Source of the DNA: Mytilus edulis
Taxonomy: Eukaryota
Reading direction: 5' to 3'
Length of the DNA: 64,000 bases
Assembly: GCF_963676685.1 (NCBI RefSeq)
Contig: NC_092346.1
Coordinates: 34,410,001-34,474,000 of the forward strand
Every line of letters begins with the position of its first letter. Position 1 is the stretch's first letter. Below, piece after piece: positions 24,397-29,944 of the stretch. Below the pieces are notes generated by a model, which had not been told where the DNA came from, did not search any database, and worked only from the letters and a program-made list of their open reading frames with translations. The position numbers and the translations under genes are program-made.

Positions 24397-25110
24397 ATGT
24401 TTTAGATTGTCGACTGTAACATTAAAAAAATAGTGTTCATTCATTTTAATGTTTTCAGTTGTTTTTTGTTGTTGTTTTTTTTAGTTTTATTTTATCTACC
24501 TAGTAACTTTCTGTTAATTTTTCAATAAAACAAATTGATTCGGTATTATCTAACAAGAAACCAAGGTAATATTGTTTGGATCTGTAGCCCAAATGCAGAT
24601 ATTCTAAATTATAATAAATCTTCAAATCACCTCTTTAGGACAGCAACCTCTGATATTTTTTTGTAATCAGGGTTGTGGCTATCTCTTCGAAAATCCAGTC
24701 TATCCGTTACTCTTTTATATTAAATAGTATTATCAAAAGTGACATCATTTTCATCCAATCAGAGGACAGATCGTCAAGAACGCCAAAGCCGTTACAATCA
24801 TTCAGGTCAAAGGTTTATCAAATCGAAACTAACCCAGAATGCATCGAAAAATTGAAAACGGGACTCTTTAGACTAGTTTAAAGCTAGAAACATTCATTGC
24901 CAACATTAATTGCACAATTTGTCTAAACCGGGCGACCATCAACTTACAATATACACTGTACGAACGTCATTTTTAGTCGAGCGTTTGGTTTTGACAGGTT
25001 TTTCTTAAGTTAATAGCATTCATACTTGAAAAATAATATGACATATATACAACCTTTATATTTATAATCGTTATGGTATTACATATACAGTATATTATAC
25101 ATGTATATGT

Positions 25111-26083
25111 CTATTTTAATCGATTATCCCAATACTGCTTAACAGCCTGCATCTTCGTCGGAATTAGTATATTTTGTACTGGTTGTGGTAAGTAAGAAAT
25201 ATTGTACTTTTCCTTTATAGTATTCATTATAGCATGTGCGATAAATTGATACTCATCAGAAATCATTGGAGTATACAGCTGATCTTCGCTATCTTTCAAA
25301 AGGAAATATAACCGCAACACGTCATCTTGACCATCTTGCGATAAGGTTCTAACTATACACTGAATCATTACATATATGCCGATGATAATCACATTCATAA
25401 CAAAAGGATGATTCATCAACGAAGTCGAAACCAACTCAGACAAACACTTGTCATGGGTAAATCTTTCCTTTAACCATATCGGGAAAGAAATTTGTAGATA
25501 CTGGTCTACTTTCCAATTCTTGATTGCATCGACAATAACTGGATGAATTTTGTTCATCTCGGTTAAAGCAATGGTAAAGTCGCCGTTCAAGTAGTAGAAA
25601 AGTGCCAATTGAACTCTTCCCGATATTAGTCTGTCATTGAATCCACAAGGATAAATAAGTGAAAGAGAGTCCTTGTACAAACTTTCAGCTTTTTTTCGCG
25701 AATATCTGGTTCTAAGTGAGTGATAATAATCTGCTATCTGCCTCCTGATGACGGTTTGAAAGGCATCAATAAACTCCAGTGAAATTATTTGCGGTAGAAT
25801 TGCTACTACTTCCTCTAATGCTTCGCACTGAGAACGACTCTGAATCGACATCATGATTGATAGCGATGACAAAATGAGCGACTCATTCATAATTAGCTGC
25901 TCACAAAATGTCTCTGAGATTTCTTTACATTTACGAATAGCGTTACAGAGTATCCTACATGAGGTAATTCTTTTATTTTTCGTATACCAGTTCATTGAAT
26001 GTTTAAAAATATCTTTAATATCATTTTCACAAAGTAATTCGGCAATGGTTTCTTTTATGCGACCGGATGTCAAGATAGCACTA
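25111..26083 (-). CDS. C-terminal helical (TPR-like) half of the same cGLR gene
   Basis: 973 nt without a stop. Joins in frame to 27679-28778 (…LADMI|SAILTSGRIKE…) once 26086-27678 and one AT copy are removed, giving 690 aa. The track's MKAICSFIFLFG start is transposon-derived. Confidence 0.8.
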
Positions 26084-26085
26084 AT

Positions 26086-27678
26086 CCCAAACAGAAAAAT
26101 AAATGAACAAATTGCTTTCAAATCGTAATCAAATCTCTTTCAAATCGTGATTCTGCGATTTGTTAGTACCATTTGCTTGCGATTCATTAAACAAATCATA
26201 GACAAATCAGAATTTTCCAAATTCCCTAAATCTGATTTCTATGTGATTTCTTTCTTTGGTATGATTTGTAAGCCATTTGTTTCTGTTTTTGTGTGATTTC
26301 TTTATGATTTGTTTACTTAGAATATCGTATGAAATGATTTGAAAGAGATTTGTTAACTTTGTTAGCTAGAACGGTGTGATTTCGTTATGATTTGTTAACT
26401 TTGAATATCATATGAAATGATTTGAAAATGATTTGTTTACTTTCTTAGCTATCTTGGTGTGATTCATTGATGATTTGCTACAATGAATAAAATGTTAATG
26501 CATTCCAGGTTTCTTTGTTTATCTATCTCTCTGACTTCCGGTTGAGGTCAAATTCAAATTTCAAATACTGTTCTATATTAACTGAACAAAGAAGGTTGCA
26601 AGATGGGGAGTTTTATTCAGTCTATGAAAGATGACGGTGGTAAGGAATCTTAATATTTATAATTTCACATATTTAACTAATACTATTCAAATGTTAACCT
26701 TTAAAATTCAGAAACTGTGCATTTCAGTATCTCCTTATAATAATGATAGTTGAAGTGATGTCAGGATTAATTTTAAAAATAAAAATGTGTAAAAGATGTG
26801 TAAACAGATCAAAACATTTCAAGACTAGCTTCCCGCGCCAGCAGATAAAATTCACTGGCAAGTTTAATGTTTTAATTGTTGTTTACTGACCAGGTCCCGG
26901 GCAAAATGGACAAATCTATATATATATTATATATCACAATGTAGCAGATTTGGACCAAGACTAAGACCCATCACCTATTCGACATTATTCTACTAAGTAC
27001 ACGTGGTTGCCTATGTTTTTTTTCTTCAAATTTCGGGTAAAAAGTAAGAGAAACTTCACAAAGAACAATTTGTTCCTCATCGCAACCAAAGGTAGTTCTT
27101 CTTTTAACAATTAGTGGAGTAGCTATTAAAGGTAAAATGAAGACACTTGCGCTTCAAAGTTTTGGGGTTTCAGGGGCAGAACTTATTTTTGATCTGGATG
27201 TTAATGATATAATCTGTGAATTGATGATTGATGCCAATTTATTTACGATTTGCTTGTGATTTGCTTGAGGTAGGAATATGATTTACTTCTGATTTGTTAA
27301 AGATTTGATAACAATTTCTTAACGATTTGAAAACAATTTGCTTCTGATTTGTAAATGATTTCAAAACAATTTCTTGGCAATTTGTTTATGATTTGCTTAT
27401 GATTTGTAAGCAATTTGTTCGTGATTTGTTATTGTGATTTGTTAGCTCATTTGCATGTGAAATTTTATCACTTTCAAATCACAAAGAAATCATACGATTT
27501 GTTTATCATTTGTTACCCTGATTTGCTTATGATTTGTAAGCAATTTGTTCGTGATTTGTTATTGTGATTTGTTAGCTCATTTGCATGTGAAATTTTATCA
27601 CTTTCAAATCACAAAGAAATCATACGAGTTGTTTATCATTTGTTACCATGATTTGTTCCTCAATCTTTTTTGTTTGGG
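26086..27678. mobile_element. Non-autonomous CACTA/EnSpm-like DNA transposon (1593 bp) inserted in the cGLR CDS
   Basis: AT|CCCAAACA...TGTTTGGG|AT: CCC/GGG termini, 2-bp TSD, dense subterminal GATTTG/CAAATC repeats, 130-bp internal tandem duplication (27391 and 27521). Confidence 0.85.
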
Positions 27679-28778
27679 ATCATATCCGCTAGAATAAGAC
27701 ATTCGTCTTTAGACTTGTGATCTATCATGTTATTCTGTGGAATGAAGTAGTTCGGTAGGTAGTGATTCATGTACATGATGTGAAGAAGAGTCAGCGATTT
27801 GAATAATAACTCCGTTAACCGGATCGGCTGCCATTCCGCATTGTGTATGACGTCACTTATCCAAAATATCACCGTCTTCATGAAATATGAACATAGGACA
27901 TCTGAATTTTTTAGATGTATCATTTTAAAATGCTTGAGTAGATAATAACAATGGTATTGGGTGTCCGTCCAATTCATCACCAAGACCTTTTCTGCTTCTG
28001 TAAAAGACAGTCTCCATTCTATATCTTTATGTTTACTCAGGGCGTGACCAGTCGCTACAGCATAAACACTTAAGTGTTTCATTTTTTCAACATCGCCATT
28101 AAAGTGTGCTCGTTGAAAAATATCATTAGCAAATGATGGCCAATGAGTGCATTTGATGGCGTGTACAATGTCGGTTGAAAATCCTTCAACACCCTCTTCT
28201 GTGAGAGCAGGTCCGTTTATATGATTTTTATACCCAGTCGTTCCGCATTCTTTCATAGCTCTCACAAATCCTTTACTGCTCAAGTAATAGTGACGTCCAT
28301 CTTTCTTAATCAGATAATCTTGAAAACCATTGAATCTTCGCGTATTAGAAGGGATAATTAATTTGATGTATCCTTGGTGACAAAGGTCGGAAATGAAAGG
28401 AAAACTGTTCACATTATCCCGTAACTTTCCAAAGTACTCGTAAGATTCGACCCAAGTAGCCACGAAAATCATATCCAAGTCGCATGCATTTGGCATTCCT
28501 TCTGCATAGCTCCCAGCAAACACTGGCAAGACCTTTGACTCGTTCAAATCAGGTTCGAGCTCGCGCCATTTTCTTGCATATGCCTGCCAAACGTTTACAC
28601 AGTTTATTTTCATCTGACGGGTAACCATTTCATATGTCATCATTTCTGTTACAAAATAAGTCCAGGGTTCCGACTTCCAGTCCTCAGGTAATTCGGATTT
28701 GCTTAAAATGGTTCGCACTTCCTCTACCACGGAGTTGCCATCTGAGTTGAACGCAAAAGCTGTTTTGATTGACTGCAT
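27660..28778 (-). CDS. Mab-21 domain / cGAS-like receptor (cGLR) nucleotidyltransferase, N-terminal part; truncated by a transposon insertion
   Basis: NTase motif GSYAEG...DLDMIF, third acidic residue in STDIVHAI, Mab-21 signatures EWRLSFTEAEK, SYFMKTVIFW and LPNYFIPQNNM. The last residues PNKKD* are encoded by the transposon TIR. A probable 5'UTR intron acceptor lies at 28803-28804. Confidence 0.9.
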   Translation of the reverse strand: MQSIKTAFAFNSDGNSVVEEVRTILSKSELPEDWKSEPWTYFVTEMMTYEMVTRQMKINCVNVWQAYARKWRELEPDLNESKVLPVFAGSYAEGMPNACDLDMIFVATWVESYEYFGKLRDNVNSFPFISDLCHQGYIKLIIPSNTRRFNGFQDYLIKKDGRHYYLSSKGFVRAMKECGTTGYKNHINGPALTEEGVEGFSTDIVHAIKCTHWPSFANDIFQRAHFNGDVEKMKHLSVYAVATGHALSKHKDIEWRLSFTEAEKVLVMNWTDTQYHCYYLLKHFKMIHLKNSDVLCSYFMKTVIFWISDVIHNAEWQPIRLTELLFKSLTLLHIMYMNHYLPNYFIPQNNMIDHKSKDECLILADMIPNKKD

Positions 28779-29944
28779 TTTTATATTCGTGTTTTTATGT
28801 TTCTATAAAGAAAATAAAATGTTTTAAAATAAATATGTCTGGAGATGTCAAACTCAACAATAGACCCCTTAAGGTAGATAGGGTGTCTTCCTCTATCTTG
28901 GATTTTAAAATACCAAAAAACAATCGGTCTAGATCTTTAGTAAAATGTGAAAATTTTGAGACTAGTAGGTTATTCATGTGTACGAATTTTCATTTCAATA
29001 TAGAAAATGACATGTTTTATCATATTTATGGTTGTATTTTACAAAAAAACAGAATACTTTTGTTTGATTAAGTTTTTTCAATCTTTGCCAAATAAGGGGG
29101 AGGCACAATGTAAGGGCAGATAATTCAGATAAAGTTACTTCTACAATAGAATGTGTTAGGAATTTACATATTTCATTATGTAGCAAGAAAACGAGTCCCG
29201 TAACCCCATTTTTTTTTCTTATCTGAAAGCACAATATTAGAGCTATCTTCTCATATTTTATCTCAAAATTCTATTATGTAGTTTTCGTTATATGGCAGAA
29301 AATTGGGTTTTCCATGCAGAATCTTAGATTATACAAAATCTGTCAATTTTGCACTACCTGTAGCGTGAAAATAATCCCCGTGACCCATTCCTTTTATCAT
29401 TTTTTTTAAAAGCATGATAATAACTACATTTTGGCAAATTATTAAACAATTCTATGGATTATAATTTAGACCTTAACATAGATTTGTTATTAATAGTTGA
29501 AGTTAGAGTTTGTAGAATTTTCTATTATTTTCATATCATTGACAATGAGGGTCGTTTGAAAACAAAACTGTACTGTTATACCACTGTCCCAGGTTAGAGG
29601 GAGGGTTGGGATTCCGCTAACATGTTTATCACCGCCACATTACGTATGTATGTTCCTGTCCCAAGTCAGGAGCCTGTAATTCAGTGGTTGACGTTTGTTT
29701 ATGTGTTACATATTTGTTTTTCGTTCATTTGTTGTTGTATTTTTATATAAATGAGGCCGTTAGTTTTCTCGTTTGAAATGTTTCACATTGTCATTTCGGG
29801 GCCAGTTATAGCTGACTATGAGTTATGGACTTTGCTCATTGTTGAAGGCCATACTTTGACCTATAGTTGTTAATTTCTGTGTCATTTTGGTCTCTTGTGG
29901 ATAGTTGTCTCATTGGCAATCATACCACATATTCTTTTTTCATA

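What the first reader, a model, noticed from the sequence alone, without database searches (positions are those of the whole stretch)
25111..28778. cGAS-like receptor cut between its catalytic core and helical tail by a CACTA-like transposon
Seen in sequence: the two minus-strand ORFs are one gene. Deleting 26086-27678 plus one AT copy gives ...ECLILADMI-SAILTSGRIKE..., a 2073-nt, 690-aa ORF. Both halves remain free of stops and frameshifts, implying a recent insertion. Established: GS...DxD...D with WRLSF/SY..KT/YFIP..N are Mab-21/cGLR hallmarks, and cGLRs make cyclic dinucleotides upstream of STING and are expanded in bivalves. Inference: the insertion falls just after the Mab-21 core, and the TIR supplies PNKKD*. 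The allele may therefore encode a 372-aa enzyme lacking the TPR-like module (altered sensing or regulation) rather than a plain null.
Basis: partly seen in the sequence, partly recalled or inferred. Interest (0 to 1): 0.8.

Follow-up and report, generated by a model that had tools for sequence, protein, structure and literature searches.

The report
Transposon-split cGAS-like gene in mussel
One copy of a mussel immune-type enzyme gene (a cGAS-like receptor) has been cut in two by a recently inserted small jumping gene, while uninterrupted copies of the same gene still exist in other mussels, so this is an ordinary but cleanly documented broken allele.

Summary
The two minus-strand ORFs (28778-27663 and 26082-25111) are the halves of one intronless 690-codon gene. 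A 1593-bp non-autonomous terminal-inverted-repeat transposon (26086-27678, 2-bp duplication AT) sits inside codon 367. A public Mytilus edulis protein of exactly 690 aa (CAG2230221.1) reads straight through the junction (6 of 367 and 18 of 323 residues differ, no indel). Precise empty sites occur in DNA contigs of two other coded organisms and in one RNA-library contig.

The N-half is a complete Mab-21/cGAS fold with G89-S90, D100/D102 and D203. The insertion falls at the end of Pfam Mab-21_C. The C-half is an all-helical domain with only weak TPR resemblance and no Pfam hit.

"CACTA-like" is not established. The 2-bp duplications and subterminal repeats fit that clade, but the ends are CCC..GGG and I found no transposase partner. 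Whether the 372-aa product is made or active was not tested. The most likely reading is a young, segregating loss-of-function allele, in a genus already known for presence-absence variation.

cGLR expansions in bivalves and cGLR fusions to repeat domains are already published. I therefore rate this a new member of a known kind, of modest interest. The scan has noted other cGLR genes, one pair of them broken, on other DNA of this genome.

The parts
27681..28778 (-). Codons 1-366 of the cGAS-like (Mab-21) gene: NTase core plus Mab-21_C helix bundle. Holds G89-S90, D100, D102 and D203.
   Evidence: ORF. Pfam Mab-21 25.9 bits and Mab-21_C 50.4 bits, both above the 24.1 cut-off. AF2 model pLDDT 87, pTM 0.87. 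Foldseek to cGAS and Cv-cGLR1, E 1.6e-13 to 2.8e-13. Invariant D100, D102 and D203 in 20 sequences.
27679..27680 (-). Target-site duplication copy 1 (AT). These are the first two bases of codon 367.
   Evidence: Sequence. 12 of 12 family copies have 2-bp duplications.
26086..27678 (.). 1593-bp non-autonomous TIR DNA transposon. Its ends are CCCAAACAGAAAA... and ...TTTTTTGTTTGGG. It has dense subterminal GATTTG-type repeats and no long ORF.
   Evidence: Terminal inverted repeat I24 and repeat families D1-D8. 46 genome matches, 23 of them full length. 56 left ends in the genome against 0 for the reversed control pattern.
27660..27677 (-). Element-derived coding tail Pro-Asn-Lys-Lys-Asp plus TGA stop (27662-27660). 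It ends the 372-aa ORF.
27389..27648 (.). 130-bp tandem duplication inside the element's subterminal region (27389-27518 and 27519-27648, 98% alike).
   Evidence: Repeat family D5.
26084..26085 (-). Target-site duplication copy 2 (AT).
   Evidence: Sequence.
25111..26083 (-). Third base of codon 367, codons 368-690 and the stop. This is the C-terminal all-helical domain and is not translated from the upstream start in this allele.
   Evidence: ORF in frame. 94.4% identical without indels to residues 368-690 of M. edulis P0025. In full-length relatives the match lies at about residues 324-692 of 640-719-aa proteins. AF2 model pLDDT 79.7, almost all helix.

Best explanation
This is a young, insertion-disrupted allele of an intronless 690-codon Mab-21/cGAS-like receptor gene of a Mytilus (edulis-complex) mussel.

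Shown: a 1.6-kb non-autonomous cut-and-paste transposon from a family of about 56 copies landed inside codon 367. That is exactly where the cGAS-like catalytic cage ends and a 323-residue helical domain begins. The insertion duplicated 2 bp (AT). The uninterrupted allele still exists in other mussels and appears in an RNA library.

Inferred: in the inserted allele, translation from the normal start stops after five element-encoded codons. This gives at most a 372-aa protein that holds the whole catalytic fold but lacks the C-terminal domain. The downstream half has no start of its own in context. I judge the allele most likely (about 65%) to be a loss-of-function or hypomorphic variant segregating in the population. 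That fits the large structural and presence-absence variation known for mussel gene families.

The intact protein is predicted to be a nucleotidyltransferase of the cGLR type. Its acidic pI (6.4) argues against a simple dsDNA or dsRNA sensor. Its ligand, its product and the role of the helical domain are unknown.
For: Structure of the locus: frame arithmetic; TIR and subterminal repeats; family, 23 full-length matches; 12 of 12 copies with 2-bp duplications; 56 ends, control 0.

One gene:
- M. edulis CAG2230221.1 (P0025) is 690 aa and sits in the same 90% cluster as the 372-aa ORF. It differs at 6 of 367 and 18 of 323 residues with no indel across the junction.
- M. trossulus P0002, Actinia P0003, Saccostrea P0004 and unnamed proteins P0007 and P0017-P0021 are all contiguous. 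The N-half ends and the C-half begins at adjacent residues.

Polymorphism:
- X3 contig (355 nt) and X4 contig (1386 nt) cross a precise, in-frame empty site.
- X16 (RNA library) has a contig across the same joint.
- X1 has a 175-nt contig identical to the window across the right element/gene junction (44 + 131 nt).

No decay: in the stretch covered by M. galloprovincialis P0026, the window allele is the odd one out at only 2 of the 7 sites where it differs from P0025 (read).

cGAS-like nature: Pfam; PDB sequence hits MB21D2 at 2.4e-11 and Cv-cGLR1 at 5.6e-9; AF2 plus Foldseek TM 0.63-0.70 over the whole N-half; invariant D100, D102 and D203 and near-invariant G89, S90.

pI 6.35-6.47, against pI above 8.5 for nucleic-acid-sensing cGLRs (passage of PMC9980059).

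Background: mussel presence-absence variation (abstract and passages of PMC7653742).
Against: - No data on transcripts of the inserted allele, so null versus truncated product is inference.
- X1 may be the sample the assembly was made from, so it is not independent proof of the insertion. No listed contig bridges the left junction at 26085/26086.
- All runs were Logan contigs, which show presence but not absence or zygosity. The RNA-library contig could stem from contaminating DNA.
- The organisms behind X3, X4 and X16 are coded. The empty sites may therefore be from sister species rather than the same species. P0025, however, is named M. edulis.
- The literal cGLR motif of Li et al. is not matched. 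Ala replaces Q/T before GS, the spacer to the third acid is 98 residues against 50-90, and Thr precedes that acid.
Confidence: 0.88

Rival explanations
1. One reading: the inserted allele is expressed and gives a stable 372-aa stand-alone cGLR core without the helical module. Such a product could be deregulated, constitutively active or dominant-negative, so the allele is a functional variant rather than a null.
For: The 372-aa ORF holds the entire predicted cGAS-like fold, with the last helix at 357-369 and high confidence. All catalytic residues are present. The insertion lies at the domain boundary. According to Li et al., 87% of cGLRs are stand-alone enzymes (passage). An AATAAA lies 419 nt after the stop inside the element.
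Against: No transcript evidence was obtained. The C-terminal domain is kept in all 11 relatives of 625-692 aa, which suggests it is needed. A premature stop with a long foreign 3' part often lowers mRNA and protein levels (general knowledge). AATAAA in AT-rich DNA is expected by chance.
Confidence: 0.15
2. The element is removed from the pre-mRNA by splicing, or excises somatically, so carriers still make a near-normal 690-aa protein.
For: On the gene strand, the element's downstream end plus flank reads as a pyrimidine-rich run ending in AG at 26082-26081. Cut-and-paste elements can excise.
Against: There is no GT donor at the upstream element edge (…GATATGAT|CCCAAAC…). An acceptor after the AG at 26081 would start the exon at the third position of codon 368. 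The only RNA-library contig over the joint has the same 7 in-between letters pattern as a DNA contig, so it is explained by an empty allele. No autonomous partner was found that could drive excision.
Confidence: 0.05
3. The insertion is an assembly artefact, and the real haplotype is uninterrupted.
For: Mussel assemblies are rich in repeats. No listed contig bridges the left junction, and X1 has zero depth in the 25917-26047 bin.
Against: A 175-nt contig of run X1 matches the right junction with 0 differences. The insert has a perfect 2-bp duplication and full-length ends like the 11 other copies, which a chimeric join would not create.
Confidence: 0.03
4. The two ORFs are naturally separate genes: a short cGLR and an independent helical protein.
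For: A 60%-identical copy of the C-half alone lies 111 kb beyond the window's end, with no Mab-21 part within 13 kb upstream. Public gene calling lists the 372-aa ORF as a protein.
Against: That lone copy is a 5'-truncated remnant of a 688-aa gene that is intact in M. galloprovincialis (P0030, 98% over residues 362-688). Its homology runs about 6 codons across the insertion-site equivalent. Every full-length relative is a single chain.
Confidence: 0.01

Closest known systems
Mytilus edulis unnamed protein CAG2230221.1 / UniRef100_A0A8S3TFA8, 'Mab-21-like HhH/H2TH-like domain-containing protein' (P0025)
   Same: It is the same gene. It is 690 aa with the same start.
   Different: It is uninterrupted. 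The window allele carries the 1593-bp element in codon 367.
Animal cGAS-like receptors (cGLRs) as defined by Li et al. 2023 (PMC9980059), including Cv-cGLR1 (PDB 8gjw) and human MB21D2 (7lt1)
   Same: The fold matches (Foldseek E about 1e-13, TM 0.59-0.70). The GS / DxD / D catalytic residues are present. It belongs to a large bivalve expansion: 110 scored matches of 702 candidates in this genome, 94 of the 110 with open frames of 600 aa or more. Li et al. report more than 200 cGLRs in some bivalves, and cGLR fusions to TPR and ankyrin repeats (passages).
   Different: The literal motif is not met (A instead of Q/T, spacer of 98). The pI of 6.4 is acidic, unlike the dsDNA/dsRNA sensors. The C-terminal domain hits no Pfam repeat model, so conserved-domain annotation may have counted it as 'no appended domain'. 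Their Tables S1 and S2 were not readable here. No activity is known.
CACTA-Mirage-Chapaev (CMC/CMCT) DNA transposons and their MITE-like derivatives
   Same: The target duplication is short: 2 bp here, against 2-5 bp for the clade and 2 bp for the Ciona ENS1_Cis and CMC-NA elements (passages). Subterminal repeat arrays are present. That such arrays are typical of CACTA elements is recalled, not tested.
   Different: The termini are CCC..GGG, not CA..TG or CAC..GTG. No transposase is linked. There is no similarity to the ends of a 12.9-kb CACTA element of this genome.
Gene presence-absence and structural variation in Mytilus (Gerdol et al. 2020, PMC7653742)
   Same: A gene is intact in some mussels and broken in this assembly. 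Its nearest paralogue is also damaged here.
   Different: Here the lesion is a single, precisely defined transposon insertion rather than a hemizygous deletion. That paper's text holds no mention of Mab-21 or cGAS (0 occurrences).

Membership tests
cGLR (cGAS-like receptor; criteria of Li et al. 2023, passage) | Active-site motif h[QT]GS-X8-20-[DE]h[DE]h-X50-90-h[DE]h | tested here: inconclusive
   F87-A88-G89-S90, then 9 residues, then D100-L-D102-M, then 98 residues, then T202-D203-I204. All three acids and GS are present and conserved: D100, D102 and D203 are invariant and G89, S90 are in at least 90% of 20 sequences. The literal pattern fails at three points: A for Q/T, a spacer of 98 against a maximum of 90, and T as the 'h' before D203. 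The extra length coincides with a low-confidence loop at 183-199.
cGLR | Homology across both the NTase core and the C-terminal helix bundle | tested here: met
   Pfam Mab-21 (E 1.2e-5, 25.9 bits, cut-off 24.1) and Mab-21_C (E 2.6e-13, 50.4 bits). PDB sequence hits to MB21D2, Cv-cGLR1 and cGAS.
cGLR | Predicted structural homology to known cGLR/CD-NTase enzymes | tested here: met
   AF2 model pLDDT 87, pTM 0.87. Foldseek finds 243 PDB matches at E <= 0.001. The top hits are cGAS and Cv-cGLR1, E 1.6e-13 to 2.8e-13, TM 0.63-0.70, covering the whole N-half.
cGLR | Ligand-activated synthesis of a cyclic (di)nucleotide that signals to STING | not testable with these tools
   This needs biochemistry. 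The pI of 6.4 differs from the pI above 8.5 of known nucleic-acid sensors.
CACTA/EnSpm-Mirage-Chapaev transposons | Short target-site duplication (2-5 bp) | tested here: met
   12 of 12 copies have 2-bp duplications of varied sequence. The clade's range comes from a passage of PMC12730594.
CACTA/EnSpm-Mirage-Chapaev transposons | Termini 5'-CA..TG-3' (CAC..GTG, CACTA) | tested here: not met
   All 12 copies begin CCCAAACAG and end TGTTTGGG. The expected termini come from passages.
CACTA/EnSpm-Mirage-Chapaev transposons | Mobilised by a DDE transposase of the tnp2/Transposase_21 type that shares the ends | tested here: inconclusive
   A 941-aa ORF with sub-threshold Transposase_21 (E 2.8e-4) and DUF1258 (E 3.3e-5) hits lies about 5 kb from a right half-copy. 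A 100-N assembly gap separates them, and no left end lies within 10 kb. None of the 14 loci with unpaired ends that I examined held a transposase inside matching ends.
Tetratricopeptide (TPR) repeat domain (for the C-half) | Match to TPR sequence profiles | tested here: not met
   0 of 23 family members hit any Pfam TPR model at E <= 0.01. The C-half alone has no Pfam family at E <= 0.01.
Tetratricopeptide (TPR) repeat domain (for the C-half) | TPR-type helical-repeat fold | tested here: inconclusive
   The AF2 model is almost all helix. Foldseek's best hit is E 0.05. VIA-align wide has its best Z at 11.3-10.8, to BtubC, PlcR, KLC1-TPR and others. This is below the tool's own caution level of about 13 for helical repeats.

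The most novel reading that the evidence does not exclude
The insertion allele is not a dead gene but a naturally occurring domain-deletion variant kept in mussel populations. It would make a free 372-aa cGLR catalytic core, released from or deprived of its C-terminal helical sensor/regulator module, alongside the full 690-aa form. That would give a segregating natural experiment on what appended helical domains do in cGLR signalling.
Probability: 0.12. Interest if true: 0.55.

Novelty: new member of a known kind. Interest (0 to 1): 0.3.

Why it matters
This is a clean, datable example of a transposon knocking out, or truncating, one member of the large bivalve cGLR repertoire. The intact allele is still available for comparison, and the nearest paralogue is also damaged in the same assembly. 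It illustrates how transposons contribute to individual-to-individual variation in mussel immune gene content. It also marks the exact domain boundary of a cGLR subfamily whose 320-residue C-terminal domain matches no Pfam family. The finding does not reveal a new kind of system. cGLR radiations, cGLR fusions to repeat domains and mussel gene presence-absence variation are all published.

Tried and rejected
1. Autonomous partner of the element.
- I paired left-end and right-end matches across the genome.
- I fetched 14 loci with unpaired or interrupted ends and scanned them for ORFs.
- Interruptions were nested retroelement-like ORFs or diverged copies.
- The one tnp2-like ORF is separated from the half-copy by an N gap, which I did not fill.
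- It is a single-copy ORF; the next best match is 44% identical.

2. Link to the 12.9-kb CACTA element noted by earlier scan notes. Its ends show no similarity to this element.

3. Is the C-terminal domain shared with the bulk of the in-genome paralogues?
- BLASTP gave only weak, co-linear hits (E 0.13 to 5).
- Profile-profile comparison of small alignments gave probability 4%, E 0.01, over 28 columns.
- This is not shown. Only the gene A/B clade and 13 library proteins share the domain detectably.

4. TPR assignment by sequence gave no hit.

5. The ESM Atlas look-up returned only unnamed, mostly molluscan clusters and one Mab-21_C cluster at score 0.89.

7. Scan-note searches by several words gave nothing. 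Single words gave leads.

8. Literature.
- 'cGLR/bivalve/Mab21', 'Mytilus/cGAS/Mab21' and 'cGLR/tetratricopeptide' surfaced no paper in their listings on this gene, on a transposon-split cGLR, or on this C-terminal domain.
- One search listed only 12 of 208 papers, so absence from print is not shown.
- Supplementary tables of PMC9980059 (S1, S2), which may list this protein or its domain class, were closed.
Full report
**What is there.**
- On the minus strand, a 372-aa ORF (28778-27660 with its stop) and a downstream open frame ending at 25111 lie 1.6 kb apart.
- Reading the sequence, the upstream frame runs ...GAT ATG AT and then enters a stretch that begins CCCAAACAAAAAAG.
- The stretch ends ...CTGTTTGGG and is followed by AT T AGT GCT ATC.
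- The element is therefore 26086-27678 (1593 bp), flanked by AT at 27680-27679 and 26085-26084.
- Removing it together with one AT leaves ATT (Ile) as codon 367 and keeps the downstream ORF in frame.
- I checked this by coordinates only.

**The insert is a transposon.**
- Its ends form an imperfect terminal inverted repeat (26086-26112 against 27651-27677). Both subterminal regions are packed with short GATTTG-type direct and inverted repeats, including a 130-bp tandem duplication.
- The own-genome search lists 46 matches. Of these, 23 span the query from base 1 to 1593, and 18 of those are 90-100% identical, the nearest at 97%.
- A 27-nt end pattern occurs 56 times. Its reversed control occurs 0 times.
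- All 12 fetched copies are bounded by CCCAAACAG...TGTTTGGG and by a 2-bp direct duplication of varied sequence: at, at, at, gt, ca, ta, ta, ct, ta, ta, ta, cc (the first 6 were seen).
- There is no long ORF inside, so the element is non-autonomous.

**Superfamily of the element.**
- The published hallmarks I could read for the CACTA-Mirage-Chapaev clade are 2-5-bp duplications and CA..TG (CAC..GTG) termini (passages of PMC4079192, PMC6004678 and PMC12730594).
- The duplication length fits. The CCC..GGG termini do not.
- I looked for an autonomous partner in 14 loci with unpaired or interrupted ends and found none.
- One 941-aa ORF has sub-threshold Transposase_21 and DUF1258 hits. It lies about 5 kb from a half-copy, but a run of 100 N separates them and no left end is nearby.
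- The ends of a 12.9-kb CACTA element flagged by earlier scan notes share nothing with this element.
- 'CACTA-like' is thus possible but unproven.

**The two ORFs are one gene.**
- A search with the N-half found M. trossulus LOC134711168 at 88% identity. Its sequence reads ...ECLILADMISAILTSGRIKE..., the very junction predicted.
- The cluster look-up showed that the 372-aa ORF shares its 90% cluster with a 690-aa M. edulis protein, CAG2230221.1.
- Against that protein the window differs at 6 of 367 residues in the N-half and 18 of 323 in the C-half, with no indel.
- In eight further uninterrupted relatives, the N-half alignment ends and the C-half alignment begins at adjacent residues. These are P0020, P0017, P0018, P0019, P0021 and P0007 (681-692 aa), Actinia P0003 (625 aa) and Saccostrea P0004.
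- A HMMER scan of 1.84 billion representatives with the C-half gave 13 hits at E <= 0.001. The eight long ones (640-719 aa) all carry the match in their C-terminal part.
- No relative ends naturally near residue 370. The short models found (P0002, P0005, P0006, P0012, P0013, P0015, P0026) are not cut at the junction.

**The insertion is young and not fixed.** I laid Logan contigs of four runs on 25000-28900.
- A 355-nt contig of X3 (DNA, organism B) lies on 25902-26082 and 27685-27851 with 7 letters between.
- A 1386-nt contig of X4 (DNA, organism C) lies on 25919-26080 and 27679-28897 with 3 letters between.
- In both cases this is the number of letters expected for a precise empty site, and the reading frame is kept.
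- X16, an RNA library of organism B, has a contig over the same joint (97 and 155 letters on the two sides), plus further pieces on the N-half. This suggests, but does not prove, that the intact allele is transcribed, because DNA can contaminate RNA libraries.
- X1 (organism A, 0.96 of the sampled words) has a 175-nt contig identical to the window across the right junction.
- X1 may be the assembly's own sample. No listed contig bridges the left junction. Contigs cannot show zygosity.
- The window's C-half shows no sign of decay. In the part also covered by M. galloprovincialis P0026, the window allele is the odd one out at 2 of the 7 sites where it differs from P0025, and P0025 is the odd one at the other 5 (read).

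**What the gene encodes: the N-half.**
- It passes Pfam Mab-21 and Mab-21_C, and the latter ends at residue 366.
- The AF2 model (pLDDT 87) is matched over its full length by cGAS and by oyster Cv-cGLR1 (Foldseek E about 1e-13, TM 0.63-0.70).
- By sequence, the best solved relatives are human MB21D2 and Cv-cGLR1.
- In a 20-sequence alignment D100, D102 and D203 are invariant, and G89, S90 are nearly so. This corresponds to the GS / [DE]h[DE] / [DE] catalytic set. My mapping of D203 to cGAS's third acid is partly from recall.
- Measured against the three criteria Li et al. used (passage), fold and two-lobe homology are met.
- The literal motif is not met: Ala instead of Q/T, a 98-residue spacer against a maximum of 90, and Thr before the third acid.
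- The calculated pI is 6.4. The nucleic-acid-sensing cGLRs of that paper have pI above 8.5.

**What the gene encodes: the C-half.**
- It folds as an almost purely helical domain (pLDDT 79.7).
- Foldseek finds nothing below E 0.05.
- VIA-align's best rows are TPR proteins at Z about 11, under the tool's own caution level for helical repeats.
- No Pfam TPR model is hit by any of 23 family members.
- Its most conserved stretch is the ...AE.LY...L..YP.GF.D...SG...LA.FYYLNG... block.

**Family context.**
- The genome (1.37 Gb) holds at least 110 scored Mab-21 matches out of 702 candidates. All but the self-match are at most 39% identical to this gene.
- 94 of the 110 have open frames of 600 aa or more.
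- I could not show that their C-terminal extensions are homologous to this one.
- Li et al. 2023 already report extreme cGLR radiations in bivalves and cGLRs fused to TPR and ankyrin repeats.
- Their supplementary tables were closed, so I cannot say whether this subfamily is in their set.
- Gerdol et al. 2020 describe massive presence-absence variation in Mytilus (abstract and passages), with no mention of Mab-21 or cGAS in the main text.

**Mechanism and verdict.**
- Shown: a cut-and-paste element inserted in codon 367, at the boundary between the catalytic cage and the helical domain. It is absent from other alleles.
- Shown: the inserted allele can encode at most 367 native residues plus PNKKD.
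- Inferred: the allele is most likely a loss-of-function or hypomorph. A truncated active or interfering enzyme (about 15%), or removal of the element from the RNA (about 5%), are not excluded.

**Steps that could not be done.**

Noticed in passing
G000:C3:34585450-34586430 (+), about 111 kb beyond the window's end; loci L026 and L029 (L029:6462-7434): The nearest paralogue ('gene B') is intact as the 688-aa M. galloprovincialis protein VDI70937.1 (P0030). In this assembly it is present only as residues 362-688 (98% identity). Residues 1-361 were found nowhere in the genome at E <= 1e-40, with 65 of 692 candidates scored. Its break lies about 6 codons upstream of the position where gene A took the transposon. 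So both members of this small clade are damaged at nearly the same domain boundary in this assembly. The 60 nt upstream of the break are unique, and a high-copy repeat lies further upstream.
   Followed up: partly
Proteins P0003 (Actinia tenebrosa LOC116308158) and P0017-P0019, P0021 (unnamed): A sea-anemone protein is 56% identical to the mussel N-half. That is far closer than any in-genome paralogue (at most 39%) and closer than oyster (41%). In a 15-row tree it groups 100/100 with four unnamed proteins as sister (97/99) to the Mytilus clade, excluding Saccostrea. This could be contamination of the anemone assembly, cross-phylum transfer, or unsampled bivalve relatives.
   Followed up: partly
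L033:996-3818 (+) = G000:C6:82169095-82171917: A single-copy 941-aa open frame has sub-threshold Transposase_21 (tnp2) and DUF1258 hits. Its relatives elsewhere in the genome are 22-51% identical. It is a candidate CACTA/Mirage-type transposase, and its own element ends were not found within 10 kb upstream.
   Followed up: partly
window 28799-28900 and 26048-27750: In the contig runs, summed depth rises about 100-fold or more over the element. It also rises over the last 100 bases laid (28799-28900), just upstream of the gene's start codon, and many contigs carry loose ends at 28868-28869. Another repeat therefore appears to abut the gene's 5' side.
   Followed up: no
M. trossulus protein P0002 (499 aa): The public model of the M. 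trossulus orthologue stops at residue 499 (...YSRKKS), 191 residues short of the 690-aa form. I did not check whether this is a model error or a second independent lesion.
   Followed up: no
G000:C4:33352683-33353036 (-), locus L027: This is the only other place in the genome with detectable similarity to the C-half (31% over residues 59-174, open frame 351 aa). It may be a remnant or a distant member of the same domain family.
   Followed up: no
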